The translations under genes and the position numbers were made by a program. From the IMG/VR virus record IMGVR_UViG_3300032236_001859, positions 1 through 64,000 of that record: a DNA stretch of 64,000 nt. One strand, written 5' to 3'. Within the stretch, counting starts at the first letter, position 1, and the number at the start of each line of letters is the position of its first letter. Under the pieces are notes generated by a model. It made no database searches and was not told the DNA's origin. It saw nothing but the letters and a program-made list of their open reading frames with translations. This document shows, piece after piece, positions 13,874 to 31,422 of the stretch.

Positions 13874-13889
13874 TCCCCACGTGGGGACT
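13872..13889. repeat. perfect 18-bp palindrome AGTCCCCACGTGGGGACT
   Basis: Self-complementary; directly abuts motif copy 2 and the ruvA stop. Confidence 0.8.
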
Positions 13890-14461
13890 CACTTCCTCGC
13901 CTTGCCGATTAAGTTCTGTGCGATGACTTGAGCAGTGAGATCTGGAGCCGCGGTGACCGCATCCCGGATCTCAGCGATGTCGAAACGTGCGCCGAGACCA
14001 AGGTTTGATATAACCGCGAATACCGCGGATACCTTGGTGTCGTACCCAAGGGTGTCCTTGGATTGGAACCGAGACTGTAGGGTGTCCACGAGTTTCTTGG
14101 CACCCGTGGGGCCGAATCCCTTGGCCAGCTTCGATAGCTTGGCGACATCCCCCTTGGCCACGGCATCAATGATCACCGCGGGGTCCACCGCAGTGGCCAA
14201 GCGATGCGCGGTGCGTGCACCGATGCCATCGACCTCCATGAGTTCAATGGCGAGTCGGCGGGACTCGGGTCGATTGAACCCGAAGAGAACCTGGCCCTGG
14301 TCAGTGATGTGATGGTAGACCCAATACTCGTAACTCTTGCCTTCGTTGGCAATGAAGTCCTGAATGGGGCGCACCACGGAGTACCCTACCCCACTGTCAG
14401 TGCGCAGGATGATTTCCGTGGCAGAGGCGATGAGGCAGAAGCCATTGATGTATGCGATCAT
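13889..14461 (-). CDS. ruvA: Holliday junction branch-migration protein RuvA
   Basis: MIAYING...GVGYSV (OB fold), LFGF, VDGIGARTA and KGFGPTGAKKL (two HhH motifs), domain III-like C-terminus. Confidence 0.92.
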   Translation of the reverse strand: MIAYINGFCLIASATEIILRTDSGVGYSVVRPIQDFIANEGKSYEYWVYHHITDQGQVLFGFNRPESRRLAIELMEVDGIGARTAHRLATAVDPAVIIDAVAKGDVAKLSKLAKGFGPTGAKKLVDTLQSRFQSKDTLGYDTKVSAVFAVISNLGLGARFDIAEIRDAVTAAPDLTAQVIAQNLIGKARK

Positions 14462-14465
14462 GTTT

Positions 14466-14999
14466 TCACCAGGGTTTGTTGAGATGGTTGGCGTTGGCGG
14501 GCCGGCTGACGAGCTCGCCCTTCAGGAAGTCGGATCCATTGGAACCCATATTGTTGCAGGGCACCTCGAGAAAGTCCTCGAGGTTCTTGTCGATGAGATT
14601 GAATGCTCTACGCGCATACCGGAGAGCACCGCGTGACGACACCGAGTTGCACTGGAATATCGGGCAGGTTACCCCCTCGCATCTCGCGGCCTGCATGAAC
14701 CCTGCATCTGAGTATGAACTGTAATCCGTGGTCTGATATTCACGCACACCTAAATAGATCGTGGCATTCCAGTGCTTCCCTCCGAAATCAGAAGGCTTCT
14801 CACCGGTGATTGCTGCGAGATCGCAGACCTCAATTGCGGCCAGGATTGCCTCGTGGTGGATACCACCTACCCTCCCGATGAAGTAGAACTCGGATCCCGA
14901 ATCAGATGACACCAATTCTACCTTGCATGGTTTCGTGGGCAGCGGGCCGAGTTCCTCGATGAGGTTGGTGTACCGGATATCAGGCAGAGTTGCTGGCAT
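14466..14999 (-). CDS. hypothetical protein (177 aa)
   Basis: ORF with GGGAG RBS; possible paralog of 15027..15737. Confidence 0.7.
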   Translation of the reverse strand: MPATLPDIRYTNLIEELGPLPTKPCKVELVSSDSGSEFYFIGRVGGIHHEAILAAIEVCDLAAITGEKPSDFGGKHWNATIYLGVREYQTTDYSSYSDAGFMQAARCEGVTCPIFQCNSVSSRGALRYARRAFNLIDKNLEDFLEVPCNNMGSNGSDFLKGELVSRPANANHLNKPW

Positions 15000-15026
15000 T
15001 GCAGGCTCCCTGTGTCGCTGTCTGTT

Positions 15027-15737
15027 TCATTTGGACCTCGCTATCTTGGTTTTTAACGCAGCCAGACTGATGTCTTCTTGCTGATGTTTCCACTTGGAAG
15101 GTTTTTTTAGAAAACTCCTAGCCTGCAGTAATGCCTTGTCGGAGTGCACGTAAGCAACACTGCGCATCATCTCCCAACCATCAACACCTCGGATGTCATT
15201 GACTGCCTGCATGAACTCGTCGGGGAGATCCTCGATAATCGGTAGGACCTTTAAGGCAGTGTGAAAGCCGCTGAAGTGTGAAGTCGAGAGAACCTGGAAT
15301 ACTGGACATGTCCTGCACTCGTCATCCCCCATCATGACATGTAGCCGCGATGCCCCATCGAGTTCATCCTGTTCATACCAGTGTTTCATTATGTCTGCAT
15401 CCTGGAACTTCTCAGCGATGAGGTGAATCGTTGTCAGATATGGGTAGTCGGAAAACATTGCATCGTAATCCACTTCCTTATCACTGTTGCGGAAACGTGT
15501 GCGCTCATCCTCTGGGATCACTTGTAGTTCTGTCTCAATGACAACGTGGATATCACTCAACGAGATGCAAAGCGGGGTCATGGTATTTTTACGCAAAAAA
15601 CCAGCGCCATGAAACCCTGGATAGATTGTTTCAACTTTACGCCACTCGCGTTTCTTCCGATCAACGCGATCATCTGGAAATGGATTGACTAGGTACTCAT
15701 AACGTGGGTGGTACCTCGGGGACTCATCGCAAATCAT
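15027..15737 (-). CDS. hypothetical protein (236 aa), lower GC
   Basis: ORF with AGGAG RBS. Confidence 0.75.
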   Translation of the reverse strand: MICDESPRYHPRYEYLVNPFPDDRVDRKKREWRKVETIYPGFHGAGFLRKNTMTPLCISLSDIHVVIETELQVIPEDERTRFRNSDKEVDYDAMFSDYPYLTTIHLIAEKFQDADIMKHWYEQDELDGASRLHVMMGDDECRTCPVFQVLSTSHFSGFHTALKVLPIIEDLPDEFMQAVNDIRGVDGWEMMRSVAYVHSDKALLQARSFLKKPSKWKHQQEDISLAALKTKIARSK

Positions 15738-15749
15738 ACCGGGCTCCTT

Positions 15750-16460
15750 TTACTCAGTGGGAGTCGGGCTCCCACCATTGGTTTCTTGGTTGGTGCACCC
15801 ACGGAGGAACTCCTCCGCGGTGTCCGGTGCTTTGAACACCTGAGATGACTTGATGTTCTGCAGGATGTCCAGGGAGTACCCGTTAATCGTGGCACTCACG
15901 GGCTGTCCGTCATCCCCGGGATCCAGCACCAATTGGAGGAGGTGTTGGATTGGGAATCTCACTCCGGGGTGCTGACGATACAGGAACTGAATCACGACAT
16001 TTCGCATGAGCCCCTGCAGTGTCGCAAGTGTACCCGCAGTGATCGCGTGCATGGCAACTGGACCCCCCTCATCTGCCACAGCCGCTGCTAACAGCATGGC
16101 TCCGAATCGGGGGTCTTCTTTGGAGTAATCCACGAAGATTTTCAACATGAACTGTTGGTCCTGTACCGAGGCGTGGTCAATCCCTGGCATCACGGAATCC
16201 GCGGCATCCATCATCTTGGCGAGTTCCTCGATCTGAGCCGCGTGGATATCACATTTTTTCACGTTATCGGTGTCCAGGAATCGCTGCACCACGCGTCTGT
16301 CCACTTCCTGATACGTGGTTTCATCGGTGCCATGCTTCTTCAGGGCTGTGAACATGTAACACACCGCTGAAATCGAGGCGAGCTCACGTCTGGCCTGGGC
16401 GTCGAGCTCAATTGGACCAACAGGGAACAAGCGTTGGAGATCACTGATGCTTGGTATCAT
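15750..16460 (-). CDS. hypothetical protein (236 aa)
   Basis: ATGA overlap with upstream gene. Confidence 0.75.
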   Translation of the reverse strand: MIPSISDLQRLFPVGPIELDAQARRELASISAVCYMFTALKKHGTDETTYQEVDRRVVQRFLDTDNVKKCDIHAAQIEELAKMMDAADSVMPGIDHASVQDQQFMLKIFVDYSKEDPRFGAMLLAAAVADEGGPVAMHAITAGTLATLQGLMRNVVIQFLYRQHPGVRFPIQHLLQLVLDPGDDGQPVSATINGYSLDILQNIKSSQVFKAPDTAEEFLRGCTNQETNGGSPTPTE

Positions 16461-17755
16461 AAAACCCCTTTCTTGGATTCCTGGTAGGCTTTTACCGCAC
16501 GAATGATCTCGTGGGCAGCACTGGTTGAGTCGGGTTCATGTGCCGACGCATTCATGATCACGGCGAGCAGGCTGAGCACGGGATCCTTGAGCATGGGGTG
16601 CTCCTTGATCCCCGGGGCTCCAGTCCCCATGGCCTGTGCGGCGTGGGTCTGGATGCGCGCGGCCATGTAATCCCGGAGACGGATGGGTTCCTGGGATCTC
16701 CCGTTATCCCTGAAGACCACGGGATCCCCTGATGTTGTCACAACGACGACATCCTTTTCACGCCGCAGGGCATCGGCGATGCGCTCCACGGTATCCGCAC
16801 GGAGTACCTTGAGGGCTTCAACCAGGGGTGGGATGAGTTCAGTGTTCTCGTTGGACTCCCCTGCGAACTCCGCGGCTTCCACCCATCTCCGCGAGGTCTT
16901 CGTGAACCAACCCCCCTTGGCGAGATGTGCGGCGTGTTGCTCAGGGGTCCACGATCTCGGCTGATCGGGTTCCTGAAGGATCTCCAGGCGCTCCCAGAGG
17001 AAGTAGAGGCCGAGGTCGTAGTAAATGTTATCAATGGCCTCCCCACCGAGGTGTTGTCCCAGGTTGTACCTCCAGGTCTCCAGAACACTGTCTGGATTGG
17101 CGCAGTGGGGCACCCACCACGTCCACATCGCGATCCCTAGGAGTTCGAGGTACTCCCCAACGAAGGCTGCCCAGGGAGTCGCGTAATCGTGCTCGCGCTG
17201 CCCGAGCTCACCGAATACCGAGTTGGCACTCGCTGAATCCGTGAGCACACTGGTCTCCCAGAATCCCGCTGACCAATCCGAGAGTAGCCACAACATGGAG
17301 TCATCCTGACTCGCGGATTCCCAATTGAGCTCCCAGTGGTCTCCCTTGGATCCCCCGCGCTTCGACGACCAGTGTCGGCTAAAGCGATCAAATCGCTTGT
17401 CATAGTTATCAAGGATGTCAGACTCCCCGAGGTCCTCGGTGATCCGCTCTCGGGCATCATTGAGGAGATCCCAGAAGGCTTCCTTGTACCTCCCCGCACA
17501 TGCCTTTTCGACATCTGGGTACTTCCGTGGGCTCAGGTGTGCCTTGATCCCGTAGACCCGGGTTCGGCGTGCGCTGACCTCGACGAGATCGCTGACACAG
17601 GCGTCCACGAACTGAGCGGTTTCCTTGGTGAGGTTGCCATCACCATCGTGGCCGAACCCCAAGGACTTCAAGAAGTCCTCAGTGATCAGTGCTTTGGGAT
17701 CCTGGGGAAGCCATGGCTTCAAGGAATCCCATTGTGAGATTTCCAGTGCATTCAT
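16457..17755 (-). CDS. hypothetical protein (432 aa)
   Basis: Long ORF, ATGA overlaps at both ends. Confidence 0.8.
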   Translation of the reverse strand: MNALEISQWDSLKPWLPQDPKALITEDFLKSLGFGHDGDGNLTKETAQFVDACVSDLVEVSARRTRVYGIKAHLSPRKYPDVEKACAGRYKEAFWDLLNDARERITEDLGESDILDNYDKRFDRFSRHWSSKRGGSKGDHWELNWESASQDDSMLWLLSDWSAGFWETSVLTDSASANSVFGELGQREHDYATPWAAFVGEYLELLGIAMWTWWVPHCANPDSVLETWRYNLGQHLGGEAIDNIYYDLGLYFLWERLEILQEPDQPRSWTPEQHAAHLAKGGWFTKTSRRWVEAAEFAGESNENTELIPPLVEALKVLRADTVERIADALRREKDVVVVTTSGDPVVFRDNGRSQEPIRLRDYMAARIQTHAAQAMGTGAPGIKEHPMLKDPVLSLLAVIMNASAHEPDSTSAAHEIIRAVKAYQESKKGVL

Positions 17756-18270
17756 CGCATTTCTCCTCTGAGGTTGTAGTCGGAACGACCAATGTAGGCG
17801 ACGCCACCGTCTGCGTTCTCGAAGACCCAGAAGAGATGGTTTAGCCCCATGACGATACCGAGCCGGGATTCATAGAAGACATCGGGGAGGCATCGGATAT
17901 TGCAGACCGCAATTCTGGTTTCGGGGAGACCGCCGGGGCCATGACGAAGACGGATGACCTTGGCATCCCCGGTCTCAAAGCCGACATACTCGATGCCAGC
18001 TTTGTTGGTCTCAATGAACTTATCAGCGCTGCGCATCTTCCGGCGAAGGTGCTTCAACGTGATGTCTGTCCAGATCACAGGGTTGTTTTGGCAGTCCAAG
18101 AGAGTGGCCCATAGGTGCCACAACCGGCATGGGATGTCTATAACAACCTCACGTACAGCCGGTCTTTGTAACAAGGTGACGACACCGTCACTGTTCCCGA
18201 ACATTGTGGGGAACCCGGGGATGTCGGGGAGATCTGTTTCAGTGTTGCGAATCCAATCGGGAAGACTCAT
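17752..18270 (-). CDS. hypothetical protein (172 aa)
   Basis: ATGA overlaps. Confidence 0.75.
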   Translation of the reverse strand: MSLPDWIRNTETDLPDIPGFPTMFGNSDGVVTLLQRPAVREVVIDIPCRLWHLWATLLDCQNNPVIWTDITLKHLRRKMRSADKFIETNKAGIEYVGFETGDAKVIRLRHGPGGLPETRIAVCNIRCLPDVFYESRLGIVMGLNHLFWVFENADGGVAYIGRSDYNLRGEMR

Positions 18271-18650
18271 CTTGCCCCCTTATAGGTGAAGTAGACTTTG
18301 TTTTTGTGAACACTGCGTTTGACATCGGGGTGGTCACGGAGGAACTTGTCGATGGCACCCCACCCACACTTGAGATGTAGGCTTTGCAGGTACCCCACGG
18401 ATACTGGGCGCTTGGCCAATTTGACCTCCTCGAATGCACGCTGGAGATCGAACAGGAAAACCTCGGCACGCCGGCGCCGGTACTCTTGTTCACGTGACTG
18501 GAATGAATCGAAGACTTGCATGGCGACTCTTGCTCCGCTTTCCGGGGTGTCATCTTTGATCCCCAAGTTCTGTTTGACCAAATCGATGGTTTCCTCGAGT
18601 TCACGTCGTGTGATCTCTGGGGCGCCGGAGGCTTGTTGTGGATCATCCAT
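18267..18650 (-). CDS. hypothetical protein (127 aa)
   Basis: Tiling and overlaps with neighbours. Confidence 0.7.
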   Translation of the reverse strand: MDDPQQASGAPEITRRELEETIDLVKQNLGIKDDTPESGARVAMQVFDSFQSREQEYRRRRAEVFLFDLQRAFEEVKLAKRPVSVGYLQSLHLKCGWGAIDKFLRDHPDVKRSVHKNKVYFTYKGAR

Positions 18651-19884: not shown

Positions 19885-19893
19885 GGAGACTAT

Positions 19894-20695: not shown

Positions 20696-20697
20696 GG

Positions 20698-21490: not shown

Positions 21491-21497
21491 AGAATCC

Positions 21498-23204
21498 TCA
21501 CACAAATGGTTTGACTTCTGGTGCACAGAAAACGGCTTCTGGCACCCATGCAGACAACTTGAGACCCGCGAGGGTCCGAGTCCGCGATAACGCGACATAG
21601 GCGAGGCCATGCCGGGAATCCCCGGGCATATAGGTAATCGACTTCATGTCGACCCAGGCCTTGTCCACGGTGGCCCCCTGACACCGGTGGATCGTCATCG
21701 CCCAGCCCAGGGACAACGGGAACCCCCTGAGGTTGAATTTGGGTTGCCCCAGGGGATCCCTGACCTCCTGGGTCACCGCGGTGACCTCAACGGTTGCACC
21801 CGTGCGATCCATGGTGACCAGGATCGATACCGGGGACTGCGCAGGCTTCGAGCCGACCTCAAATGGGTTGTGCTCAGGGGTGTCATCGATTCGGGCTCCC
21901 CCGGCGACCTTGGCCTCCACGATGAGCCCGGCGTCGCCGTTGACCCAGCGTTGTTCGCCTTCCTCGGAGTAGTCATTCATGGTGAAGACTACCCGGGCGC
22001 CGACACGGAAGACATCGTTGTGCGCCAGACGACCACTCGAGATCTCCCGGGCGATGTCGGACTCCTTGATGGCGTACTTCTCCTTGATGTGGTCAGGGCG
22101 GGTATCCAGGTACTTGGTGTGCAACCTGAACAAGCGATGGCCATCGGGGTTATTGGAGACCCGCTGGAGATTGTAGTTGTCCGCGGTGGCATTGGTGGCG
22201 TAGAGCCGAATGAACTCGTCATCCTGTGGCGGTGTATCGACGACGCAGGACCTGAACACCTCGGCGACGCTTTCATCGACCTCACCCCTGCGCACCTTGT
22301 TGAGGGCTTCGAGGTACACGACTTCGTTCTGACGATGGCATTCCGTGAGTTTGATGACATCGGCCTGAGTGATCAACTTGGTGGACATCGCCCAGGTATC
22401 CTTCACCGGCGATGCCTGCCCCCAGTCGCCAACTAGGACAAGGGACTTCCCATACTTCTGGGCCACCGTGTAGAGATAATTGGCCATGCAGGCCCCGATC
22501 ATGGAGGCCTCATCAATGATGATTACCTTGGGGGTCCCCCGCATCAGCTTCTCGAGACGAATGGCATCCCTGGTCTTATTGAGTTCGCGGTCGTAGGAGA
22601 ACATGGCATCCACGGTACAGCCGCCCACATTGATGGCAGCCTTCCCCGTGGTCGCACAGATCGCGGATGGGGTCTTCTTGAGGACCTCGCGGATCACCGT
22701 TGATTTCCCGGTACCCGCGTATCCCGTGAGGATGGTGACCGTGGCTCGGGTCGATGTCAACTTGTTGAGGGCAGCCTTCTGATCCGGGCTCCAGGGAACC
22801 TCGGGCTCCTCGGGTTCGGCTTCCTCGTCCTCGAAGGCGTCACCTGCTCGGTTGTCACCCATTGAGGGTTCCGCTGGCTTCGGTGCGGGATCCCAGAACG
22901 GGGAGTCACCTGGTGGCAACACTGCCAATGTCTTCTTAAAGGCTTGCTCTGGGGCAGGCGCGGGGGGTGCCGGCCATGGGTTACTTGGTGGGAGATCCGC
23001 ATGACTACCCCCGAGTTCCACGACGACATCGGCCTCATCGACGGCTACTTCGACCTCATTCTTGATAATTGCGGTGATGGCCTCCTGGGACAGGAAGACC
23101 TGGTTGAACTGCCTGACCACCTTGAGGCGGCGGGCGTCATCATGGAGTCCGGGGAGGTCAAGTAGAACTCCTTTCCCGGGGACCCTTATGACTCGTGTGG
23201 GCAT
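21498..23204 (-). CDS. Pif1/RecD-like SF1B helicase
   Basis: GYAGTGKS, IIDEASMIG, VGDWGQ, RQ, FPLSLGWAMTIHRCQGATVD, YVALSR. Confidence 0.92.
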   Translation of the reverse strand: MPTRVIRVPGKGVLLDLPGLHDDARRLKVVRQFNQVFLSQEAITAIIKNEVEVAVDEADVVVELGGSHADLPPSNPWPAPPAPAPEQAFKKTLAVLPPGDSPFWDPAPKPAEPSMGDNRAGDAFEDEEAEPEEPEVPWSPDQKAALNKLTSTRATVTILTGYAGTGKSTVIREVLKKTPSAICATTGKAAINVGGCTVDAMFSYDRELNKTRDAIRLEKLMRGTPKVIIIDEASMIGACMANYLYTVAQKYGKSLVLVGDWGQASPVKDTWAMSTKLITQADVIKLTECHRQNEVVYLEALNKVRRGEVDESVAEVFRSCVVDTPPQDDEFIRLYATNATADNYNLQRVSNNPDGHRLFRLHTKYLDTRPDHIKEKYAIKESDIAREISSGRLAHNDVFRVGARVVFTMNDYSEEGEQRWVNGDAGLIVEAKVAGGARIDDTPEHNPFEVGSKPAQSPVSILVTMDRTGATVEVTAVTQEVRDPLGQPKFNLRGFPLSLGWAMTIHRCQGATVDKAWVDMKSITYMPGDSRHGLAYVALSRTRTLAGLKLSAWVPEAVFCAPEVKPFV

Positions 23205-23214
23205 GACTTCTCCT

Positions 23215-23249
23215 AAAAAGGAGCCCCCACGTGGTAACCACGTGGGGGC
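23215..23249 (-). terminator. intrinsic terminator
   Basis: Perfect 12-bp stem GCCCCCACGTGG/CCACGTGGGGGC, 3-nt loop, then TCCTTTTT on the minus strand. Confidence 0.8.
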
Positions 23250-23273
23250 CGGTTTCTCATGAGTAAACGTGGG

Positions 23274-23576
23274 TTACACCGACTGCACTTTTTGACTCTT
23301 CTTTTCCGTTTTGGCTTTCACCGGGATGGTTAGATCTGGTCGAGTGCATGGTGTGAGCCCAGCTGATAACAATTGCTTTTCCAGGCGAGATGCCTCAGCC
23401 TGGGTTGCGACTACGGCCCGTCGTGCGATTTGCTCGTTGCGTCCTGATGTCCGGACATCTTCTTGAGCTCTGTGCAGGGCCTCGCGTAATTTGCAGAGTT
23501 CGCGCTCTAACTTCTCGATCTCAGCTTTATGCTCGGCTTTGAGAAGCGCGATCTTACGGTCTTGTGCGGTTATCAT
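23274..23576 (-). CDS. coiled-coil hypothetical protein
   Basis: GGAG RBS before ATG 23576; heptad-like sequence. Confidence 0.7.
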   Translation of the reverse strand: MITAQDRKIALLKAEHKAEIEKLERELCKLREALHRAQEDVRTSGRNEQIARRAVVATQAEASRLEKQLLSAGLTPCTRPDLTIPVKAKTEKKSQKVQSV

Positions 23577-23607
23577 ACTGGCTCCAAGGGCGTAGCCTAT
23601 ACCCAAG

Positions 23608-23623
23608 TTTACTCAGCGTCAAG
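23608..23623 (-). promoter_or_regulatory. conserved promoter/operator motif, copy 3
   Basis: TTTACTC-AG-CGTCAAG; minus strand TTGACG-N17-TAGGCT is sigma70-like. Confidence 0.75.
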
Positions 23624-25699
23624 TCACCCGAGGTCCACGCTGAGCTCAGTGGTGAGCCTGGGGCCACTTGAATGCGTAATCGTTATCTTACGCGACTTGG
23701 AGTCAATGCACACCGAAGCAATGCTCTCGCGATCTCTCCGCGAACCCTCGAGTCCGCAGAGTCGCAGGATCTCATGGTATGGCCTCGAGATCTCGGCAAC
23801 ATTGGCAATGCTGGCACGGAACTTCGCAAAGTCCTCCTCAATGGCCTTGGCGGTTTCACCGTCGTCCTCCCCGGAACTCTGGACAATGTGAGTTAATGTG
23901 CATTCAACACTGGAAGTCAACGCGATGACATCATCGAGTTTCCCAAGCCACACGGTATCGCTCACACTCCGGTCATCCCCGTAGTACAAGCTGAACGCGG
24001 GAAGACTAAAGGTCTCCTGACGCACCGCCTTTGACCGGACCTCTGCGAAATCGCTGAAGAGCATCGGGGTGTTTCCGGCATCGCGTAGGGCCTCCAGGCC
24101 GTCATCAAAGTTTTCGTAGACATCAAAGAACAGGATTTCACCCTTGACGCCGTCATCGAGACGAATGAAGGTGTTGGCCCGCATGTGGGAGGTATGTGAA
24201 CCCCAGGGATGCGTGGCGATGTCGGATAGCTTGAGGGGGACATCAATTACCATCAAGGCTGCCTGGGCACGCACTGCATCTACACCATTGAGTGATTTTA
24301 CGGAAACACAGACCCCACTGGGAACCCATGACCCGCTAATCACATCACACCCCGTTGCCGCCCCTGATTCAGGTTTCCATGATGGTACCGACGCTGGGAA
24401 ATTAAATCTCGCCGAGGTGTCCGAGGTATCATCAAGACAGGAATCATCCATGCCAACGATGAGGACCTGGCTATCCAATGTCTTCAAGACAATCATGGAT
24501 GCCAGCTCGGCTACACGTGCGTTGCGGGGTAACAATGTTTTCGTGAGATAAGTGTTATCATAATCACTGGGTACCGGCCAGCTCACCTGTGGAGCCCCGA
24601 TGTAGTGCCGGTAAAAAGCGCGATACACGAGTTCTGGGAACTCCTGGTTCGCGTAGCAACCCGTGTAACAGACATCAGAGACTCGAAGTTTGCCATCCTG
24701 GTAGCACTTCGCTTTCTCCATAAATGACTTCTGCGTATTCCGGATACCAGCCTCGAATTGATTCTGGTATAGGCCCCAAATGAACTCTACTGTCTTTGGA
24801 TCCAGAATCAGTGAGTTGCGATCTGGTAGCTTGGGGGTCACTGGGGCGTTGCCGTGATCGATGGCAATACACCAGTGCATCGTGGAACGCATCTCTGGGG
24901 TAGCGTTAAATTCGATGTCGTCAAACTTGAAGTGCTTGCGAAACTCCTGTGATCGCACATCGACCTGGATACGCTGGCCATGCCAGATGACCCCAAGGAC
25001 ACCCTCTGCACCACTCCACCCTGGGTGGGTGTCCTCCCAGACCTCGTACCCCCGATGCTTGTAATGATTACCCTCGGCGTCGAGCACTCGGCGAAACCTA
25101 TCACGAAAACTGATAACCTTGGCGGGCTCCCCCTGCCCGGGCTGCTTCATGAAGACATCAAGGGAGGCATGATAGAATGCAGTTGCCTCGACAACACGGA
25201 TGACTTCGGATTCCGAGGGGATCCCAATCATCTGGATCTCGGTGCCCTCACACCCCCAATTTGGATCGATCTTTTCGAGGAGGGAATCTCGATACTCGGC
25301 ATCCTTGAAGAACTTCTTGCCCTCGATCTCGAGGATCCCGAATTGCGACGAAATGATGAGGCGATTCGAGAACGCAAGGGCGGCACAGAGCCCCATGCCC
25401 GCGGGATCCTGTTCGCGTTCCACACTGGAGTCCCACCCGGAAACCGCGATGCTCAGGGCGGCACCGACATCTGTGATCCCCTTGCCGTAGTCGCGCACCG
25501 TCAGAGTGGTGAGGCCCTCTCGTGTGGACTCCACGGTGACATCAACACGTGGGCGTACCCCAGTGGTCTCAATAGGCAAACTGGCGCGATAGGCGTTCTG
25601 GAGAACCTCGGTAACCGCGGAACCGAAGTTGCTGAAATATCGTGCAGCCTTGGAGAAAAAGTTCGAGGAGACATGAATCGGAGTCTGAGTCATTGTCAT
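23624..25699 (-). CDS. GHKL (HATPase_c) ATPase-domain protein, MORC/rIIA-like N-terminus
   Basis: EVLQNAYRA (N box), VRDYGKG (G1), DPAGMGLCA (G2). Confidence 0.8.
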   Translation of the reverse strand: MTMTQTPIHVSSNFFSKAARYFSNFGSAVTEVLQNAYRASLPIETTGVRPRVDVTVESTREGLTTLTVRDYGKGITDVGAALSIAVSGWDSSVEREQDPAGMGLCAALAFSNRLIISSQFGILEIEGKKFFKDAEYRDSLLEKIDPNWGCEGTEIQMIGIPSESEVIRVVEATAFYHASLDVFMKQPGQGEPAKVISFRDRFRRVLDAEGNHYKHRGYEVWEDTHPGWSGAEGVLGVIWHGQRIQVDVRSQEFRKHFKFDDIEFNATPEMRSTMHWCIAIDHGNAPVTPKLPDRNSLILDPKTVEFIWGLYQNQFEAGIRNTQKSFMEKAKCYQDGKLRVSDVCYTGCYANQEFPELVYRAFYRHYIGAPQVSWPVPSDYDNTYLTKTLLPRNARVAELASMIVLKTLDSQVLIVGMDDSCLDDTSDTSARFNFPASVPSWKPESGAATGCDVISGSWVPSGVCVSVKSLNGVDAVRAQAALMVIDVPLKLSDIATHPWGSHTSHMRANTFIRLDDGVKGEILFFDVYENFDDGLEALRDAGNTPMLFSDFAEVRSKAVRQETFSLPAFSLYYGDDRSVSDTVWLGKLDDVIALTSSVECTLTHIVQSSGEDDGETAKAIEEDFAKFRASIANVAEISRPYHEILRLCGLEGSRRDRESIASVCIDSKSRKITITHSSGPRLTTELSVDLG

Positions 25700-26304
25700 T
25701 TCATGAAATCCTTATGACTAAGGTTTTTGGGTACCGGGAGGTCGTAGACACGCGCTACAGCCTTCACGGCGACCACGGGATCATAGATGCCTTCACATGC
25801 GGCCTGGATGCCCACCAGGGCCTGGCAGCCTGAATCAATGAAGTTCAGCCACTTGGCATTACCACAGCCCAAGGCGTAATCGGCGACGTATCTCGCGGAT
25901 TCCGAGAGTGCGTCGAACTTGGGGTCGAGTTCGACTTCTGTACCCACCGCATTCTTTGGCTTAATCGCGGAGATCCGACGGAGCAGCGGTCTCATCTCGT
26001 ATTCCCCGATCTCAGTCCACTTCCCGATGTCCTTGAGACACCAGGTGACCTCCTCGGAGTCGATGAGGAATTGTTTCTCGGGGTCAAACCATTCAACCCA
26101 GTGGGGGGCATCCTCGTTACCCTGGGTGGCCTCTTCCAGGCAGGCCACAAAGGTACCGGGATCCGGTAGTTCCACCTTGGTGTCCACCAAGGCTTCGAGA
26201 CGGGCAATAAAACCTGAGACGTCGCTGATCTCACCTTGGATACCAACAAATTCGCGGAGATCACGGATAACCCCGCGCAGGGTTTCTTTTTCTTCGGGGG
26301 TCAT
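25696..26304 (-). CDS. hypothetical protein (202 aa)
   Basis: ATGA overlaps. Confidence 0.75.
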   Translation of the reverse strand: MTPEEKETLRGVIRDLREFVGIQGEISDVSGFIARLEALVDTKVELPDPGTFVACLEEATQGNEDAPHWVEWFDPEKQFLIDSEEVTWCLKDIGKWTEIGEYEMRPLLRRISAIKPKNAVGTEVELDPKFDALSESARYVADYALGCGNAKWLNFIDSGCQALVGIQAACEGIYDPVVAVKAVARVYDLPVPKNLSHKDFMK

Positions 26305-26489
26305 GGAGTCCTCTTCTCCACGGTACCATCGAGGTAGCCGTGGTGCCAGGTAATGAACTCGGACTCGAGGCCCTGACGCTCAATGAAGAGCGCCAGGGCC
26401 TCGATGAGCCCAGTTTTCGTGATGCCCTCCACGGTGTCCTCAACCGCGGAGAGGTGGTCTAGGATACCTGAGGTGGCGCCATCGCTCAC
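26301..26489 (-). CDS. hypothetical protein (62 aa)
   Basis: Overlaps both neighbours by 4 bp. Confidence 0.7.
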   Translation of the reverse strand: MSDGATSGILDHLSAVEDTVEGITKTGLIEALALFIERQGLESEFITWHHGYLDGTVEKRTP

Positions 26490-28486
26490 GACTCCCTCCA
26501 GGTCACCGCGGCGAAGTGGAGGGAGTCGACGTGATGGATCTCGTATTTGCCATCATACGAGTTCAGTTGACCGCCGGCGTCCTCATGGGCGACCTCAAAA
26601 CACCAGTCCAACCAATCCTGGTACTGGTTCTTCTTGAGATCCTCCTTGGGATTCCATTTCTTGGCATGGACTTCATCTTTATCGCCGAGTAAACCACGTG
26701 TCTTTAACCAGCAGGTTTTACCGTAATCAGAGTACCCATTGTTCACGGAATGGGCGGCGACCTCGGTTACCGCCTTGTCCGCTGGGCACTCCTGTGTCGA
26801 CGGCAAGGCAAGCATGGTGTACTTCTCGGGACCACAGCTGAAGGATACCGAGGGGAGAGGATTACCCTCAGTGCCGTCTTCTGACATCTGGCGATGGAAC
26901 CCATCGTTGTCGAGCTCGAAGCCATAACACTTCTTGATATCGAAGCGCATGGCAAGCGCGGGCTCAAAGGCTTGCTGTAACACTGGGTTACTGGCCTTGG
27001 GGAGTTCGTTGGCAATGAACTCCTTGAGCTCCGTGGTATCCCCAGAGAAGTCGTCGTATTCTTTACGCAGGACCTCACAGACCGTGGAGTATGGCAGGAA
27101 ATTGCCATCACGATCACAGAGCAAGTGCATGTGCTCAGGGGGGACGATGAATTGCGACTCCTTAACGGTATCGAGATCCCGGACACTGAACCCTAGCTCA
27201 CCAAATGAACCAATGGTGATATATGGTTTCGCATTGCGGTGGCTGTTGGTACTGCTGAGAATATGCGGCCACCCCACCTTAGACATCCGATAGTATTCCA
27301 TACGCTGGGCTTCACCACCGGAGACTAGGATGCTACCAGGACCCCAGATCTGAAGCAGTTCACGCACGAAATGCACCGCATTTTTATCGGGGTGCTTTCC
27401 AGTTACCAACCCCCACGCATTGGTTTCCAGGTATGTACGGAGGTCACCTGGGCGTGCCAGCTTTTCGTCAAACGTACCCCACCTGATCAGGAGATCAACG
27501 AATGGTGGACACGTGAACTCGTTATTACCCCAGTGGGCGAGCAAGGGGAACATGCTACCCTTGCATGTAACCCGAATCGGCAGCGTTTTCTGAATCGACT
27601 CGATCAGAGACAGAAATTTGGAGTCTTGGATCTCATACCCTTCGATTTCACGGAGCTCGCTGGATTTTCCAGCGTACTCAGACATGGTGCGGATAATCAA
27701 TTTCTTGATAGCCTCTATGGCTTCATCCCACTTCAGTCTTCCCGTGTCCTCCTTCTTGTACTGGAGGTTGGCAATGATGCCCTCTATCACCGCCTTCTTG
27801 GGTCTGCTGTAATCAACCTTGTCGGCGTACTTGATATAGTTCTCGATTTCAGAGTAGACGCGCCGAGTATCAACCCCGCCCATGCCCCCTGGGGGTACCA
27901 CGAAGAGATCGGCGTGGGCACAGAACAAATCGAAGGAGCCCAACATCGCCTTGGTCAAGAAAACGGCGAGATGGTCGGTATCCCCGATCTCCCACTTAAA
28001 GGCTTTGCGCTCGCAATACTGCTCCCAACGCGATCTCCCCAGCTGCCCCAGCTTATATGCCAAATAGGGGTTCATCGCGAAAGTAACCCATGGGGGTTGC
28101 CCCTGCATGGCCAGCATGGTAGACGTCGCCGAATGCGTGATGCCGCCTACACCTGCGGCTGCCTTGGAGAACTCGAGATCCGAGAACTTGTGAACCAAGG
28201 ATTGAGAGACCTCACGATAGAACAACCGATTACACCGGATCCCGGGGTTCTGTTTGGGAGTCGGCGAGATCTCCCCCTCAACCCATGCGGGGACCTCGAT
28301 GGGGAGCGCGTACAGGGATAACGGAATGTTGATGGTGCGGGGTTCTCCATCATCGCTGGGGAACCCTGCGGGGGCCGAGATGATCGCGAAATCATCCCAT
28401 GAAAAAGCCGCACGGTTTCGTGCGGCTTCGGCTTGGAGATTGGCGAAGCGGGTGCACCCGACTTCGAGGACATTGATAGGATCCAT
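26486..28486 (-). CDS. hypothetical protein (666 aa)
   Basis: Long ORF, AAAGGT RBS; no motif recognised. Confidence 0.85.
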   Translation of the reverse strand: MDPINVLEVGCTRFANLQAEAARNRAAFSWDDFAIISAPAGFPSDDGEPRTINIPLSLYALPIEVPAWVEGEISPTPKQNPGIRCNRLFYREVSQSLVHKFSDLEFSKAAAGVGGITHSATSTMLAMQGQPPWVTFAMNPYLAYKLGQLGRSRWEQYCERKAFKWEIGDTDHLAVFLTKAMLGSFDLFCAHADLFVVPPGGMGGVDTRRVYSEIENYIKYADKVDYSRPKKAVIEGIIANLQYKKEDTGRLKWDEAIEAIKKLIIRTMSEYAGKSSELREIEGYEIQDSKFLSLIESIQKTLPIRVTCKGSMFPLLAHWGNNEFTCPPFVDLLIRWGTFDEKLARPGDLRTYLETNAWGLVTGKHPDKNAVHFVRELLQIWGPGSILVSGGEAQRMEYYRMSKVGWPHILSSTNSHRNAKPYITIGSFGELGFSVRDLDTVKESQFIVPPEHMHLLCDRDGNFLPYSTVCEVLRKEYDDFSGDTTELKEFIANELPKASNPVLQQAFEPALAMRFDIKKCYGFELDNDGFHRQMSEDGTEGNPLPSVSFSCGPEKYTMLALPSTQECPADKAVTEVAAHSVNNGYSDYGKTCWLKTRGLLGDKDEVHAKKWNPKEDLKKNQYQDWLDWCFEVAHEDAGGQLNSYDGKYEIHHVDSLHFAAVTWRES

Positions 28487-28496
28487 GAATTACCTT

Positions 28497-29330
28497 TCAG
28501 AACGGAGGAGAGTTGTCGTCGATGCGGGACCAGAAATCATTGAACACTCGGGGTGCAGCGCCATCACGGTGCCGTGTCTTAATCACGGATTCCACAAATC
28601 TGCGGTAGACCTCGTCCGAGATCTGGATACCTTTGACCTGGGTGAGCACCCTGAACAAGAGACCAGTGGTGTTCAGACAATCACAGAGACAGTAATCGAT
28701 GACATCATCGGTGCGACCGGCCTTGATGAGGTCGGCGACCTGGGAGCCATCACAATCAAGTTTTCCTGGTAACCCGACGAGGCGAGACCAGAAGTTGAGG
28801 TCACCTCCAGAACGTGATTTCCCGGAAAGGAAGACACTGAGGTCCAAGTGATGCTCATTGGAGCTATACGAACTCCGGGGGTCATCCCAGGGCTTCAATG
28901 CAAGGCCACGAAACCACCAGGGCACCGGTATATTGTGCTTGAGGGCCTGGGCCTCCATCAAGGGGAGGTCGAAGTTGTGGCCACCAAAGGTGACCAGGGT
29001 ACGACATCCCAGGGAGTTCACGGCACCGACAACTGAAGCCCAGAAGGCCTCAGTAAAGGAGCGAGCGAAGACATTGGCAATGGTTTGAACCCCAAGCAAA
29101 CGGAGGTCCTCGGAGATCGCGAGCATGCAGGCGACCACTGGGGTCTGGAGTCTGGCGGGATAGAAACAGTTTTCGGTCTCCTTGCAGATCTTGTCTTCCA
29201 CCCTGGCCAAGCAGGCCTCGTAGTTCTCGGCTACCAGTCCACCGGTCTTGGCATCCCTGGTGTAGCCATGGTTGGTTTGGTAAACGATGTTGTCGTGTCT
29301 GACACTTTCGATATCAAGTACCAGGTACAT
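28497..29330 (-). CDS. PolB-type 3'-5' exonuclease-like protein
   Basis: ExoI LDIES, ExoII TFGGHNFDLP, ExoIII YCLCDC; GGAG RBS before ATG 29330. Confidence 0.88.
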   Translation of the reverse strand: MYLVLDIESVRHDNIVYQTNHGYTRDAKTGGLVAENYEACLARVEDKICKETENCFYPARLQTPVVACMLAISEDLRLLGVQTIANVFARSFTEAFWASVVGAVNSLGCRTLVTFGGHNFDLPLMEAQALKHNIPVPWWFRGLALKPWDDPRSSYSSNEHHLDLSVFLSGKSRSGGDLNFWSRLVGLPGKLDCDGSQVADLIKAGRTDDVIDYCLCDCLNTTGLLFRVLTQVKGIQISDEVYRRFVESVIKTRHRDGAAPRVFNDFWSRIDDNSPPF

Positions 29331-29949
29331 CGGTGGGCTCCGCGTAAACATTGTAGAGGTGGACAACGCCGCCGTCATGGACGACATGCGGGGACATCTG
29401 TAGGTTCGCCCAGCGCTCCGATTTCTCGGCCTCCTCCTTGTCCTTGTAGGGGCGAGAAGAGATCACACCGTCGACGCAGATGACCACTGCGGTGCGTGGC
29501 AATGGGGCATTGGGATCATAACCCGAGATGTCGGGGGTGGCATCGGAGCGCCCCGTGGGGGCGACGACATCGTCTTCCTGAGCGATACCCTCACGGAGCC
29601 GTCTGGACTCAATCTGAGCCAGCGCGGCTGTCTTGATCTCACCAAGAGTGATGTCACACCCCCGCTTGACGACCCCGAATCCTCCGAGATGGAGGAGCTT
29701 GGCGATCACTGGGGTCACCGCATCGGATACCGGATGTCCTCCATTGGGGTCTGCGGGGGCCACTGCGTAGATCATACCATCGAAGATCGGGACGGGGTCC
29801 ACGGAGGATGAGACCACAGTGGCGATCTGGTTGGTGCGCAGGCAGTGTGCCAGGAACTTCTCGGCACCCCCGGGGGAGATGACCACGTAGGCATTGGACA
29901 TCTCGATCCAGTTGAAGTAGAACTTCCTGAACTCGTCGAACACGCTCAT
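29314..29949 (-). CDS. hypothetical protein (211 aa)
   Basis: ATGA overlap with ruvB stop. Confidence 0.75.
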   Translation of the reverse strand: MSVFDEFRKFYFNWIEMSNAYVVISPGGAEKFLAHCLRTNQIATVVSSSVDPVPIFDGMIYAVAPADPNGGHPVSDAVTPVIAKLLHLGGFGVVKRGCDITLGEIKTAALAQIESRRLREGIAQEDDVVAPTGRSDATPDISGYDPNAPLPRTAVVICVDGVISSRPYKDKEEAEKSERWANLQMSPHVVHDGGVVHLYNVYAEPTDVPGT

Positions 29950-30914
29950 TGCTTTCCAATCTTGCCGAGGATCTCGGCACCTCCAGTGGTGAGCTTGCGG
30001 CCTTGGCGGCCGCGTTCAATGAAACCCTGCTGGAGTAACCAGGGCTCATAGGTGTCTTCAATGGTGCGCTCTTCTTCGTCGAGAGCCGCGGATAAGGTCT
30101 TCAACCCCGTGATCCCATTGGTGGCCAGGATCTCGAGGATCCTGACTTCCATCTTGCCGAGACCATGAGTGTAGCCGAGGCGATCCAGGGTGCGCTGTAC
30201 GGTACCCGTGGTGATCCCCCCGGTCTCCGAGATCGAGGATCCAAAGTAGGTATCGAAGACGGCCTCGATGAGGCGCCCCGCGAATCTACCGGTGCCATGA
30301 CATGGCTTCACGAGGAGCCCGATGGCAGCGGGATCCCAGGAGATCTCCTTGATGTCCTCGGACTCCCCATGATAGGCATCAACGGTCCACTTGAGGACCT
30401 CAAGCATGGAGACGTCATCGTAGAGCTCGAGACGGATGTGATGCTTGAAGCGATCACGCATGGGCTCCGGGATCAAGCCCTCACGAGTCGTCGCCCCTGC
30501 CACAGTATAATCGGCGACGTCGAGGGTGATCATGGGTTGGTTCTCACCCATGGATACTGTGACCTTCTGGTCTTCCATGACATGGTAGAGATACTCGGAG
30601 ACCTCGCCAGGCAGTGCATGGATTTCATCCAGGAACAGCAGACCCCCTGGGGGAATCGTGGTCAACGTGGGCAGTATATCCGTGGGCTTCTCGACTGCGG
30701 TGCAGTTGAGAACTGTAACACTCTCAGGCCTCAGCCCGAGTTCATGGGGGACCACGTGAGCCGCCAGGGTGGTCTTACCCACGCCCGGTGGGCCCACGAT
30801 GAGGAAATGTGCGAATCTCTTCGATCTGCGTTTCGCGGCGCGGACGGCAACAGCGAGTTGCTCGACGGCATCAGTTTGGCCGTGGAACGCTTGGAAACTG
30901 TTCGGACGGGGCAT
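29946..30914 (-). CDS. ruvB: Holliday junction branch-migration ATPase RuvB
   Basis: FHGQ, GPPGVGKTT, LFLDEIH, YHVMED, GATTREG, MRDRF, YEPWLLQQGFIERGRQGR (winged-helix domain). Confidence 0.95.
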   Translation of the reverse strand: MPRPNSFQAFHGQTDAVEQLAVAVRAAKRRSKRFAHFLIVGPPGVGKTTLAAHVVPHELGLRPESVTVLNCTAVEKPTDILPTLTTIPPGGLLFLDEIHALPGEVSEYLYHVMEDQKVTVSMGENQPMITLDVADYTVAGATTREGLIPEPMRDRFKHHIRLELYDDVSMLEVLKWTVDAYHGESEDIKEISWDPAAIGLLVKPCHGTGRFAGRLIEAVFDTYFGSSISETGGITTGTVQRTLDRLGYTHGLGKMEVRILEILATNGITGLKTLSAALDEEERTIEDTYEPWLLQQGFIERGRQGRKLTTGGAEILGKIGKQ

Positions 30915-31422
30915 AACGTGCCTCCAATAAGGTTAGTATAATTATTTCTTCATCCCCCCTTCTCTGCGAGTAATCGCACTTAAAACAGGATGGCTTGTCA
31001 TCCTGTATAACTGCCTGTCTCGTAAGAGCATCTGACATTGGCTTGAGGCCACCCACGTAATTCCCGTAATCCATCTCTCTGGAGTTACCGGTGTAGACGC
31101 GCTCAACGGACCAATGCGACCACGGCAGCATGAGGCCACGCAATGGTGCGATGAAGGGTACTATCCCGGAATACCACTTGTTGCGGTATGTAGAGTAGAT
31201 TCTCCAGTGTGCGTACTGTGACTTATTCTGGCTCTCGACACGGATCGGAACACGTATCACAAACGGGAGCACTGGCTCCACTATTTGCTGTGGGATCTGA
31301 TTGGGCGATTTGGTCGGGGCGACTGCGGACTTCTTCCGCGAGCACGACTTTACATGTGCCTTGATCGTGGTGAGATCACCGCTGATCGTTTCCCCGCACC
31401 CCGGGCATCTCGTGCTTGTCAT
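30871..31422 (-). CDS. RusA-like Holliday junction resolvase with N-terminal Zn-finger-like motif
   Basis: REMDYGNYVGGLKPMSDALTRQAVIQDD resembles RusA D-x-D-N...K...DAL...DD with the second Asp replaced by Gly; N-terminal CPGC...HVKSC. Confidence 0.65.
   Translation of the reverse strand: MTSTRCPGCGETISGDLTTIKAHVKSCSRKKSAVAPTKSPNQIPQQIVEPVLPFVIRVPIRVESQNKSQYAHWRIYSTYRNKWYSGIVPFIAPLRGLMLPWSHWSVERVYTGNSREMDYGNYVGGLKPMSDALTRQAVIQDDKPSCFKCDYSQRRGDEEIIILTLLEARYAPSEQFPSVPRPN

What the first reader, a model, noticed from the sequence alone, without database searches (positions are those of the whole stretch)
13889..31422. Phage-encoded RuvA + RuvB with a RusA-like resolvase in place of RuvC
Seen: full RuvA (13889..14461) and RuvB (29946..30914) with intact motifs, 15.5 kb apart rather than adjacent; the gene overlapping the ruvB start (30871..31422) has a RusA-like motif and a Zn-finger-like N-terminus; no RuvC was recognised. 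Established: bacterial ruvA and ruvB are usually adjacent and act with RuvC or RecU; in E. coli RusA suppresses ruv defects via RecG rather than RuvAB; phages commonly carry a resolvase but, to my knowledge, rarely the RuvAB motor. Inference: a self-contained viral resolvasome in which RusA may couple to RuvAB.
Basis: partly seen in the sequence, partly recalled or inferred. Interest (0 to 1): 0.78.

Follow-up and report, generated by a model that had tools for sequence, protein, structure and literature searches.

The report
Phage RuvA, RuvB and zinc-finger RusA module
An uncultured 216-kb soil or freshwater phage encodes its own Holliday-junction motor (RuvA and RuvB) next to an unusual zinc-finger RusA-type cutting enzyme, and relatives keep the same set, which suggests a viral junction-resolving machine built with a different nuclease from the bacterial one.

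Summary
On the minus strand the window encodes a three-domain RuvA (13889-14461), a RuvB with all ATPase motifs (29946-30914), and a 183-aa protein overlapping the ruvB start by 44 nt (30871-31422). No family library recognises that protein. Its AlphaFold model matches E. coli RusA clearly (Z about 10, next fold 5.4) behind an N-terminal CxxC...HxxxC zinc finger.

The window is the first 64 kb of a complete 216,043-bp virus genome. That genome has no RuvC, RecU, Hjc, T7 endonuclease I or canonical RusA hit. It does hold a tandem endonuclease VII ORF at about 128 kb, which two relatives lack.

The RuvB belongs to a deep clade of about 40 protein clusters, separate from bacterial RuvB and found on contigs up to 215 kb. 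Within the clade the zinc-finger RusA form sits directly upstream of ruvB in 9 of 10 informative contigs. In two deep lineages the order is rusA-like, ruvB, ruvA without gaps. RusA relatives lacking the finger are never next to ruvB (0 of 54).

The best reading is a conserved viral branch-migration and resolution module with RusA in RuvC's role. Physical coupling and nuclease activity are untested, and the RusA D72 equivalent is Gly. I rate it a new variant of a known kind.

The parts
13889..14461 (-). ruvA: 190-aa Holliday-junction-binding protein. Domain I is an OB barrel (res 4-62), domain II holds two helix-hairpin-helix motifs (65-133), a short linker follows, and domain III is a three-helix domain (142-189).
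   Evidence: Pfam RuvA_N and HHH_5, and TIGR00084. phmmer matches M. tuberculosis and T. thermophilus RuvA over the full length. hhalign against bacterial RuvA gives probability 99.6 over columns 1-190. AlphaFold pLDDT 84, with the top 34 PDB hits all RuvA and core rmsd 1.6-2.0 A.
29946..30914 (-). ruvB: 322-aa AAA+ branch-migration ATPase with a C-terminal winged helix. It lacks about 20 N-terminal residues of E. coli RuvB.
   Evidence: RuvB_N 6e-40, RuvB_C 5e-19, NF000868 244 bits. PDB 7pbl E 2.6e-48. The motifs are invariant across the clade. It is a member of a monophyletic phage clade.
30871..31422 (-). Zinc-finger RusA-like gene (183 aa), whose last 44 nt overlap the ruvB start.
   Evidence: No Pfam, PHROG or NCBIfam hit. 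240 homologues found by phmmer. AlphaFold pLDDT 91. Foldseek and VIA-align put RusA on top.
31342..31422 (-). N-terminal zinc-finger module (res 1-27; C6, C9, H23, C27; a beta hairpin plus a helix).
   Evidence: Sequence. Model secondary structure E2-5, E12-15, H17-26. C6, C9 and C27 are present in 53-59 of 133 family members. Weak profile match to the ZNF512 C2HC finger.
31273..31341 (-). Basic, proline-rich linker (res 28-50) with low model confidence.
   Evidence: pLDDT 64-78 in this block. The linker is K/R/P-rich and of variable length in relatives.
30910..31272 (-). RusA-fold nuclease domain (res 51-171) with S64, N66, D118, N121, K127, D131, D141 and D142. G120 sits at the RusA D72 position.
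   Evidence: VIA-align Z 10.2 to 1q8r over residues 51-169. Residue mapping. Column conservation.
30921..30925 (-). GGAGG ribosome-binding site for ruvB, inside the 3' end of the rusA-like gene and 6 nt before the ATG at 30914.
   Evidence: Read directly from the sequence.
31376..31969 (-). Upstream ORF of unknown function (197 aa, possibly starting at residue 31) that overlaps the rusA-like start. An ORF of 137-162 aa sits at the same place in relatives (homology not tested).
   Evidence: ORF list. ORFs at the same position in L005, L007, L010 and the P0061 contig. Only a weak MerR-like lead from the Atlas.
29314..29949 (-). Downstream ORF of unknown function (211 aa) whose start overlaps the ruvB stop. 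It lies between ruvB and a PolB-exo2-like exonuclease in this lineage and others.
13405..13433 (-). Strong terminator-like hairpin (13-bp stem) downstream of ruvA and one further small ORF. It may end the transcription unit that holds ruvA.
   Evidence: This is a consensus scan only.
23222..23250 (-). Strong terminator-like hairpin (13-bp stem) between the ruvB-containing gene block and the block that ends with ruvA.
   Evidence: This is a consensus scan only.

Best explanation
The three genes form a conserved module for processing Holliday junctions in a clade of uncultured phages of about 190-216 kb from soil and freshwater.

Proposed mechanism, by homology to the bacterial system: RuvA tetramers bind four-way DNA junctions and recruit RuvB hexamers through RuvA domain III. 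RuvB pumps DNA so that the junction migrates.

Instead of RuvC, the cutting enzyme is a RusA-fold nuclease with an N-terminal zinc finger. Its gene lies immediately upstream of ruvB, with the ruvB ribosome-binding site inside its 3' end, so the two are probably made together. The likely tasks are recombination-dependent replication, rescue of reversed forks, and removal of branches from replicated DNA before packaging.

Shown here: the identity and intactness of RuvA and RuvB, the RusA fold, the absence of RuvC, and the conserved gene linkage.

Inferred: that the RusA-like protein cuts junctions, that it works with RuvAB, and that the zinc finger mediates that link or extra DNA binding.
For: Identity:
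- RuvA.
- RuvB.
- RusA fold: model pLDDT 91. Foldseek's top 7 PDB hits are all RusA (TM by target 0.62-0.68). VIA-align gives Z 10.2, 9.8 and 9.5 against 5.4 for the next fold. The Swiss-Prot AlphaFold top hits are RusA of Aquifex and E. coli.
- Active-site conservation across 133 homologues of 22-48% identity: D118 in 132, N121 in 132, K127 in 132, D131 in 133, D141 in 123, D142 in 133, S64 in 132, N66 in 131.

Linkage:
- The rusA-like gene is directly upstream of ruvB in the window, G001, L005/L006, L007, L008, L010, L041, L054 and the P0061 contig. It is one gene away in L043 and about 10 kb away in L042.
- rusA-like, ruvB and ruvA are contiguous in L007 and L054.
- Forms without the zinc finger: 0 of 54 loci have ruvB downstream.
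- The phage RuvB clade is monophyletic (SH-aLRT 98) and deep, so this is not a recent capture.

Other resolvases:
- No RuvC, RecU, Hjc, T7 endonuclease I, DUF3882, RuvX or Pox_A22 in the genome.
- The complete relative G023 lacks both RuvC and endonuclease VII.
Against: - G120 replaces RusA D72, one of the residues reported as critical for cleavage (PMC1636454). Only 1 of 50 zinc-finger forms keeps Asp there.
- Pfam RusA does not recognise the protein.
- In E. coli, RusA acts independently of RuvAB and depends on RecG (PMC1636454), so coupling would be new behaviour.
- Gene adjacency does not prove physical interaction.
- ruvA is 15.5 kb away in this genome, with a terminator-like hairpin between the two gene blocks.
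- This genome also has an endonuclease VII ORF that could do the cutting.
- No recombinase that would make junctions was recognised.
- No RNA data were available.
Confidence: 0.62

Rival explanations
1. RuvAB and the RusA-like nuclease are both functional but act independently. RuvAB drives branch migration or fork reversal during phage replication. The RusA-like enzyme is a stand-alone resolver, as in lambdoid phages. The adjacency then reflects only shared timing in a replication and recombination operon.
For: E. coli RusA needs no partner protein and does not act through RuvAB (PMC1636454). Short RusA-like relatives occur alone in many small phages. The whole window is a replication and recombination gene block. 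In L042 the rusA-like gene lies about 10 kb from ruvB.
Against: The zinc-finger form specifically tracks ruvB: 9 of 10 informative contigs against 0 of 54 for other forms. The overlap with ruvB is kept at 30-42% RusA-like identity. The three genes are contiguous in two deep lineages.
Confidence: 0.2
2. The RusA-like protein is not a nuclease. With Gly at the D72 position it binds junctions or RuvB as a structural or regulatory factor. Cutting is done by another enzyme: endonuclease VII in this genome, or an unrecognised or host nuclease elsewhere.
For: D72 is listed among the residues critical for RusA cleavage. 49 of 50 zinc-finger forms lack Asp there. A tandem endonuclease VII ORF exists at G000 128179-129018.
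Against: All other active-site positions (D118, N121, K127, D131, D141, D142) are nearly invariant across very divergent sequences. That pattern is expected for a working metal site, not a decayed one. Endonuclease VII is absent from G001 and from the complete G023, and G023 also lacks RuvC.
Confidence: 0.12
3. RuvA and RuvB are recently captured host genes (auxiliary cargo or assembly contamination) with no dedicated phage role.
For: Almost all RuvB matches in GenBank phage records are host DNA. L012 and L013 from IMG/VR nest inside bacterial RuvB.
Against: Window RuvB is only 35-40% identical to bacterial RuvB. It falls below both NCBIfam equivalog cut-offs. It belongs to a monophyletic clade of about 40 clusters on phage contigs up to 215 kb. 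The genome is a complete record with terminal repeats and phage-type replication genes around these genes.
Confidence: 0.03

Closest known systems
Bacterial RuvABC resolvasome (E. coli, T. thermophilus, S. thermophilus structures such as 1IXR and 7PBL)
   Same: RuvA has all three domains and RuvB has all AAA+ motifs and the winged helix, so the branch-migration half appears homologous and complete.
   Different: There is no RuvC, and a RusA-fold protein occupies the linked position. RuvB is 35-40% identical to bacterial ones and lacks the N-terminal 20 residues. None of the clade's RuvB clusters carries a precomputed hit to Pfam PF17864, which nearly all the listed bacterial RuvBs carry. The RuvA linker is shorter, and only one acidic residue (D54) remains at the acidic pin. 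The gene order is rusA-like, ruvB, ruvA rather than ruvA, ruvB.
RusA of E. coli prophage DLP12 and phage 82 (PDB 1Q8R, 2H8C)
   Same: The fold is the same (Z about 10). The equivalents of D70, N73, K76, D80, D90 and D91 are conserved.
   Different: The phage protein adds an N-terminal zinc finger and a basic linker. The D72 equivalent is Gly, and the R69 equivalent is Met. Three residues are inserted between the N73 and K76 equivalents. Pfam RusA does not recognise it. It is genetically linked to ruvB, whereas E. coli RusA works with RecG and without RuvAB.
Jumbo phages with a lone resolvase (RuvC-like in most groups, RusA in phiKZ-like phages, endonuclease VII in T4-like phages)
   Same: These are large phages that encode their own junction-resolving enzyme, and RusA can displace RuvC in them (PMC7824862).
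   Different: Those phages are reported to lack a RuvB-like ATPase. This clade carries both RuvA and RuvB.
Phage T4 UvsW helicase plus endonuclease VII (from my own knowledge)
   Same: It is a phage-encoded branch-migration activity plus a junction resolvase, used for recombination-dependent replication and for debranching before packaging.
   Different: The protein families are unrelated (an SF2 helicase and an HNH-type nuclease), and the genes are not linked in that way.
RuvAB with RecU in Firmicutes (from my own knowledge)
   Same: It is a precedent for RuvAB working with a resolvase that is not RuvC.
   Different: RecU has a restriction-endonuclease-like fold and is cellular. No RecU is present here.

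Membership tests
RuvA | N-terminal OB-fold domain I (Pfam RuvA_N) | tested here: met
   PF01330 scores 24.9 bits against a cut-off of 23.6. The model has a beta barrel at residues 4-62. The core superimposes on RuvA at 1.6-2.0 A.
RuvA | Two helix-hairpin-helix motifs in domain II | tested here: met
   HHH_5 scores 32.8 bits. GIGARTA and GFGPTGAKKL align with the E. coli motifs.
RuvA | C-terminal domain III that contacts RuvB | tested here: met
   hhalign covers columns 141-189 with the L-x-x-L-G motif (L154 and G155 invariant). The model has three helices at 142-189. Actual binding to RuvB was not tested.
RuvA | Acidic pin (E55, D56 in E. coli; from my own knowledge) | tested here: inconclusive
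   The aligned residues are D54 and Q55, so one acidic residue is kept.
RuvA | NCBIfam equivalog score | tested here: not met
   TIGR00084 scores 81.3 bits against a cut-off of 85. The protein is a divergent member.
RuvA | Tetramer that binds Holliday junctions | not testable with these tools
   This needs biochemistry.
RuvB | AAA+ core with Walker A, Walker B, sensor 1, arginine finger and sensor 2 | tested here: met
   K47/T48, D96/E97, T142/T143, R153/R155 and R210 are invariant in the clade alignment. RuvB_N scores 6e-40.
RuvB | C-terminal winged-helix domain | tested here: met
   PF05491 scores 5.3e-19 over residues 250-316.
RuvB | NCBIfam equivalog score | tested here: not met
   NF000868 scores 243.9 against 282, and TIGR00635 scores 217.1 against 299. 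The protein is a divergent, separate clade.
RuvB | Hexameric ATP-driven branch migration with RuvA | not testable with these tools
   This needs biochemistry.
RusA | RusA alpha/beta fold | tested here: met
   Foldseek's top 7 hits are RusA, E 9e-5, TM by target 0.62-0.68. VIA-align Z is 10.2 against 5.4 for the next fold.
RusA | Match to the Pfam RusA model PF05866 | tested here: not met
   No hit even at E 10. No hit in the whole genome at E 1. Only 3 of 133 relatives match weakly. The family profile against PDB RusA gives E 0.039.
RusA | Catalytic residues D70, D72, K76 and D90/D91 (PMC1636454) | tested here: not met
   The D70, K76, D90 and D91 equivalents are present (D118, K127, D141, D142). 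The D72 equivalent is G120.
RusA | Homodimer that cleaves Holliday junctions with Mg2+ | not testable with these tools
   This needs biochemistry.
RuvABC resolvasome | A RuvC resolvase encoded in the genome | tested here: not met
   PF02075 gives no hit in G000, G001 or the complete G023. The control search rings in 8 bacteria.

The most novel reading that the evidence does not exclude
The zinc-finger RusA is a dedicated third subunit of a viral resolvasome. It docks on the RuvA-RuvB-junction complex, perhaps through the zinc finger and basic linker. Its D72-less active site is competent only in that complex. Cleavage would then be coupled to branch migration, as with RuvC, but by an unrelated fold. 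That would be an independent evolutionary solution to coupling a resolvase to the RuvAB motor.
Probability: 0.3. Interest if true: 0.8.

Novelty: new variant of a known kind. Interest (0 to 1): 0.62.

Why it matters
RuvAB is regarded as a cellular motor. A survey of 224 jumbo phages reported resolvases but no RuvB-like partner (PMC7824862), and none of my six phrase queries for a phage or viral RuvA, RuvB or RuvAB found a paper.

A whole clade of large environmental phages that keeps RuvA, RuvB and a specialised RusA together suggests that viruses can run a complete branch-migration and resolution system of their own. It also suggests that RuvC can be replaced in that system by an unrelated nuclease.

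This gives a natural test case for an old question: how, and whether, a resolvase is physically coupled to the RuvAB motor. It also defines a large RusA-like subfamily, with and without a zinc finger, whose active site lacks a residue thought essential in E. coli RusA.

Tried and rejected
- Direct family searches of the RusA-like protein (Pfam, PHROGs, NCBIfam, even at E 10) gave nothing. Recognition needed an exhaustive phmmer search, an alignment, AlphaFold and fold searches.
- PHROGs holds no RuvA or RuvB family that matches. RuvB hit only clamp-loader families.
- A megablast search of GenBank phages with the ruvB and rusA-like gene region found nothing.
- The tblastn hits to RuvB in 'phage' records look like host DNA or short unannotated contigs. 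The one record I inspected, 'Acinetobacter phage MD-2021a', is a bacterial contig with purL and tolQ.
- A possible natural fusion of RusA to RuvB (P0169, 447 aa) turned out to be a frameshifted RuvB joined to the downstream ORF.
- The 211-aa ORF after ruvB is not a second RuvA, and the Atlas gave no lead for it.
- The search for related loci could not use the RusA-like alignments. I replaced it with a back-translated motif scan.
- The two 236-aa neighbouring ORFs (15027-15737 and 15750-16460) are not paralogues.
- No RNA sequencing run was listed, so co-transcription could not be checked and read laying was not used.
- The putative recombinase at 36840-38330 and the large ORFs at 23624-25699 and 26486-28486 have no PDB relative by sequence.
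- The 'RuvB' annotated in Pseudomonas phage Callisto (PMC11079468) did not appear among matches at E 1e-10. I did not examine it further.

Full report
**Setting**

The window is the first 64 kb of a 216,043-bp IMG/VR virus record. CheckV rates it 100% complete. It has 123-bp terminal repeats, and 188 of 210 ORFs in my crude ORF call lie on the minus strand.

Nearly identical or related DNA occurs in soil, wetland, lake and sediment metagenomes. The phage is far from any isolate: its DNA polymerase is about 23% identical to the nearest GenBank phage, and megablast found nothing.

The window is a replication and recombination block. It holds:
- a family A polymerase (40023-43100);
- an SbcC-like protein (47836-50460);
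- a DnaB-like helicase (44304-45770) and another helicase (46357-47811);
- a RecD/Dda-like helicase (21498-23204);
- a DnaQ-like exonuclease (32211-32855) and a PolB-exo2-like exonuclease (28497-29387).

RuvA (13889-14461, minus strand, 190 aa):
- It passes Pfam RuvA_N and HHH_5. It scores 81 bits on TIGR00084, just under the equivalog cut-off.
- The Pfam and TIGR models aligned only residues 1-139. phmmer aligned it end to end with M. tuberculosis and T. thermophilus RuvA.
- A profile of six phage-clade RuvAs aligned with a bacterial RuvA profile over columns 1-190 (probability 99.6, E 6.8e-24). This includes the domain III motif L-x-x-L-G.
- The AlphaFold model (pLDDT 84) shows an OB barrel, the helix-hairpin-helix domain, a short linker and a three-helix domain III.
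- Its 34 best PDB matches are all RuvA. The core superimposes at 1.6-2.0 A.

RuvB (29946-30914, minus strand, 322 aa):
- It matches RuvB_N (6e-40) and RuvB_C (5e-19), and matches solved RuvBs over its whole length (7pbl, E 2.6e-48).
- The Walker A, Walker B, sensor 1, arginine finger and sensor 2 residues are invariant in the clade.
- It falls below both NCBIfam equivalog cut-offs, so it is a divergent RuvB.

**The overlapping gene is a RusA-fold protein with a zinc finger**

- The 183-aa product of 30871-31422 hits nothing in Pfam, PHROGs or NCBIfam, even at E 10.
- An exhaustive phmmer search found 240 homologues.
- In an alignment of 133 of them, S64, N66, D118, N121, G125, K127, D131, D141, D142 and Q153 are invariant or nearly so.
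- Only 3 of the 133 touch Pfam RusA. The family profile finds E. coli RusA as its best PDB match at a weak E of 0.039.
- The AlphaFold model is confident (pLDDT 91) and settles the fold.
  - Foldseek's seven best PDB hits are all RusA.
  - The best Swiss-Prot models are RusA of Aquifex and E. coli.
  - VIA-align gives Z 10.2, 9.8 and 9.5 for RusA against 5.4 for the next fold, covering residues 51-171.
- Residues 1-27 form a hairpin plus helix carrying C6, C9, H23 and C27.
- About 50 of the 133 relatives have this CPxCG...(H/C)xxxC module, followed by a basic, proline-rich linker.

**Active site**

- The profile alignment maps D118 to RusA D70, G120 to D72, N121 to N73, K127 to K76 (with a three-residue insertion), D131 to D80, and D141/D142 to D90/D91.
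- D70, D72, K76 and D90, with D91 in the cation site, are the residues reported as critical (PMC1636454).
- This is a subfamily trait. Asp occurs at that column in 1 of 50 zinc-finger forms and 24 of 83 other forms.
- Every other position is almost invariant among sequences of 22-48% identity. I take this as evidence for a working, modified metal site rather than a decayed one. That is an inference.

**Other resolvases**

- The whole genome has no match to RuvC, canonical RusA, RecU, T7 endonuclease I, Hjc, DUF3882, RuvX or Pox_A22. The control searches behaved as expected.
- It does have a 279-aa ORF at genome position 128179-129018, outside the window. That ORF carries two tandem endonuclease VII domains.
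- That ORF is absent from the sister genome G001 and from the complete 191.5-kb relative G023. G023 also lacks RuvC.
- So endonuclease VII is sporadic, and the RusA-like gene is the conserved candidate.

**Comparative evidence for a module**

RuvB homologues:
- They fall into a graded series of about 38 clusters (39-91% identity, 308-338 aa). They lie on contigs of up to 203-215 kb.
- Bacterial RuvBs follow at 35-40% identity.
- In a maximum-likelihood tree of 87 sequences, the 41 phage-clade rows form one group (SH-aLRT 98), apart from the bacterial RuvBs.

Position of the rusA-like gene within the clade:

| Contig | Arrangement | Similarity to the window |
|---|---|---|
| G001 | directly upstream of ruvB | RuvB 93% |
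| L005/L006 | directly upstream, 17-nt overlap | RusA-like 50% |
| L007 | directly upstream, 20-nt overlap | RusA-like 42% |
| L010 | directly upstream, 44-nt overlap | RusA-like 30% |
| L008, L041 | directly upstream of a truncated ruvB | RusA-like 38% and 33% |
| P0061 contig | directly upstream | RusA-like 31% |
| L054 (G023) | directly upstream | RusA-like 41% |
| L043 | one gene away | RuvB 44% |
| L042 | about 10 kb away | RuvB 40% |

- In L007 and L054 the next gene after ruvB is ruvA (31% and 28% identical to the window RuvA). There the three genes are contiguous.
- The 15.5-kb separation in this genome is also seen in G001. It is one arrangement among several and may be a rearrangement.

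RusA-like forms without the finger:
- A motif scan of IMG/VR found 64 RusA-like loci. The 62 whose match excludes the zinc-finger region sit mostly on 4-70-kb contigs.
- None of the 54 with at least 1.2 kb downstream has ruvB.
- The contrast is 9 of 10 against 0 of 54 (Fisher 4e-10). It is not phylogenetically independent.

Signals around the overlap:
- A GGAGG lies 6 nt before the ruvB ATG, inside the rusA-like coding region. This fits coupled translation.
- ruvB is in the +1 frame relative to the rusA-like gene in all four lineages I checked.

**How unusual is it**

- Among 50,697 GenBank phage records, RuvB matched 34, all below 40% identity. The matches are mostly short unannotated contigs or prophage-derived records, and the one I inspected is bacterial DNA.
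- PHROGs has no RuvA or RuvB family that matches.
- Iyer et al. [quoted passage not shown]
- A 2026 review mentions only resolvases in general. Phrase searches for phage RuvA, RuvB or RuvAB found no paper.
- IMG/VR does hold other viral RuvB-like lineages, including complete genomes of 393, 231, 175 and 97 kb. Those lack RuvA_N and the RusA-like family.
- So a viral RuvB-like gene alone is not unique. The RuvA, RuvB and zinc-finger RusA set is confined to this clade in my searches.

**Interpretation**

The best-supported reading is a conserved viral branch-migration and resolution module in which a zinc-finger RusA takes RuvC's place (confidence about 0.6).

The main rival is that the nuclease and the motor work independently and share only an operon (about 0.2). 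A non-catalytic RusA-like protein is less likely (about 0.12). Recent host capture is effectively excluded.

What remains unknown:
- whether the RusA-like protein cuts junctions;
- whether it touches RuvA or RuvB;
- what the zinc finger does;
- which recombinase makes the junctions. No RecA was found, and only a weak UvsX-like N-terminal hit was seen on 36840-38330.

No RNA data were available.

Noticed in passing
outside the window: G000 128179-129018 (minus strand); locus L002:1486-2325: A 279-aa ORF with an HTH-like N-terminus and two tandem endonuclease VII (HNH-type) domains in one chain, possibly a pseudo-dimer. It is absent from sister genome G001 and from the complete relative G023, so it is probably a sporadic or mobile nuclease.
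   Followed up: partly
IMG/VR loci L011, L015-L025, L028, L040: Other viral lineages carry RuvB-like AAA+ genes without a detectable RuvA_N or the RusA-like family. They include complete genomes of 393, 231, 175 and 97 kb. Two (L012, L013) nest inside bacterial RuvB and are probably host DNA.
   Followed up: partly
metagenome contig carrying P0173 (214,858 bp; no DNA available): Upstream of ruvB lie a 174-aa gene and then a separate 90-aa Lar_restr_allev zinc-ribbon gene. The zinc finger may be encoded as a separate gene in that lineage.
   Followed up: no
window 30871-30914: The RusA-like protein ends in PRPN and RuvB begins MPRPN. The two tetrapeptides are encoded by different DNA within and beside the 44-nt overlap. 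ruvB is in the +1 frame relative to the rusA-like gene in all four lineages checked.
   Followed up: no
window 21498-28486: Between ruvA and ruvB lie a RecD/Dda-like SF1 helicase (21498-23204), a 691-aa protein with a weak GHKL ATPase signature (23624-25699) and a 666-aa protein with no match at all (26486-28486). Neither large protein has a PDB relative by sequence.
   Followed up: partly
window 36840-38330: A 496-aa ORF has only a weak UvsX-like N-terminal PHROG hit (E 6e-6). No RecA-family hit was found in the genome apart from the DnaB-like helicase, so the recombinase that would feed RuvAB is unidentified.
   Followed up: partly
whole genome G000: The genome has 123-bp terminal repeats, and 188 of 210 ORFs in my crude call are on the minus strand. 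No tRNA gene lies in the window.
   Followed up: no
literature: Pseudomonas jumbo phage Callisto ORF113: ORF113 is annotated as RuvB next to DNA polymerase III in PMC11079468. No Pseudomonas phage matched the window RuvB at E 1e-10, so it may be a clamp-loader-type AAA+ protein rather than a RuvB.
   Followed up: no
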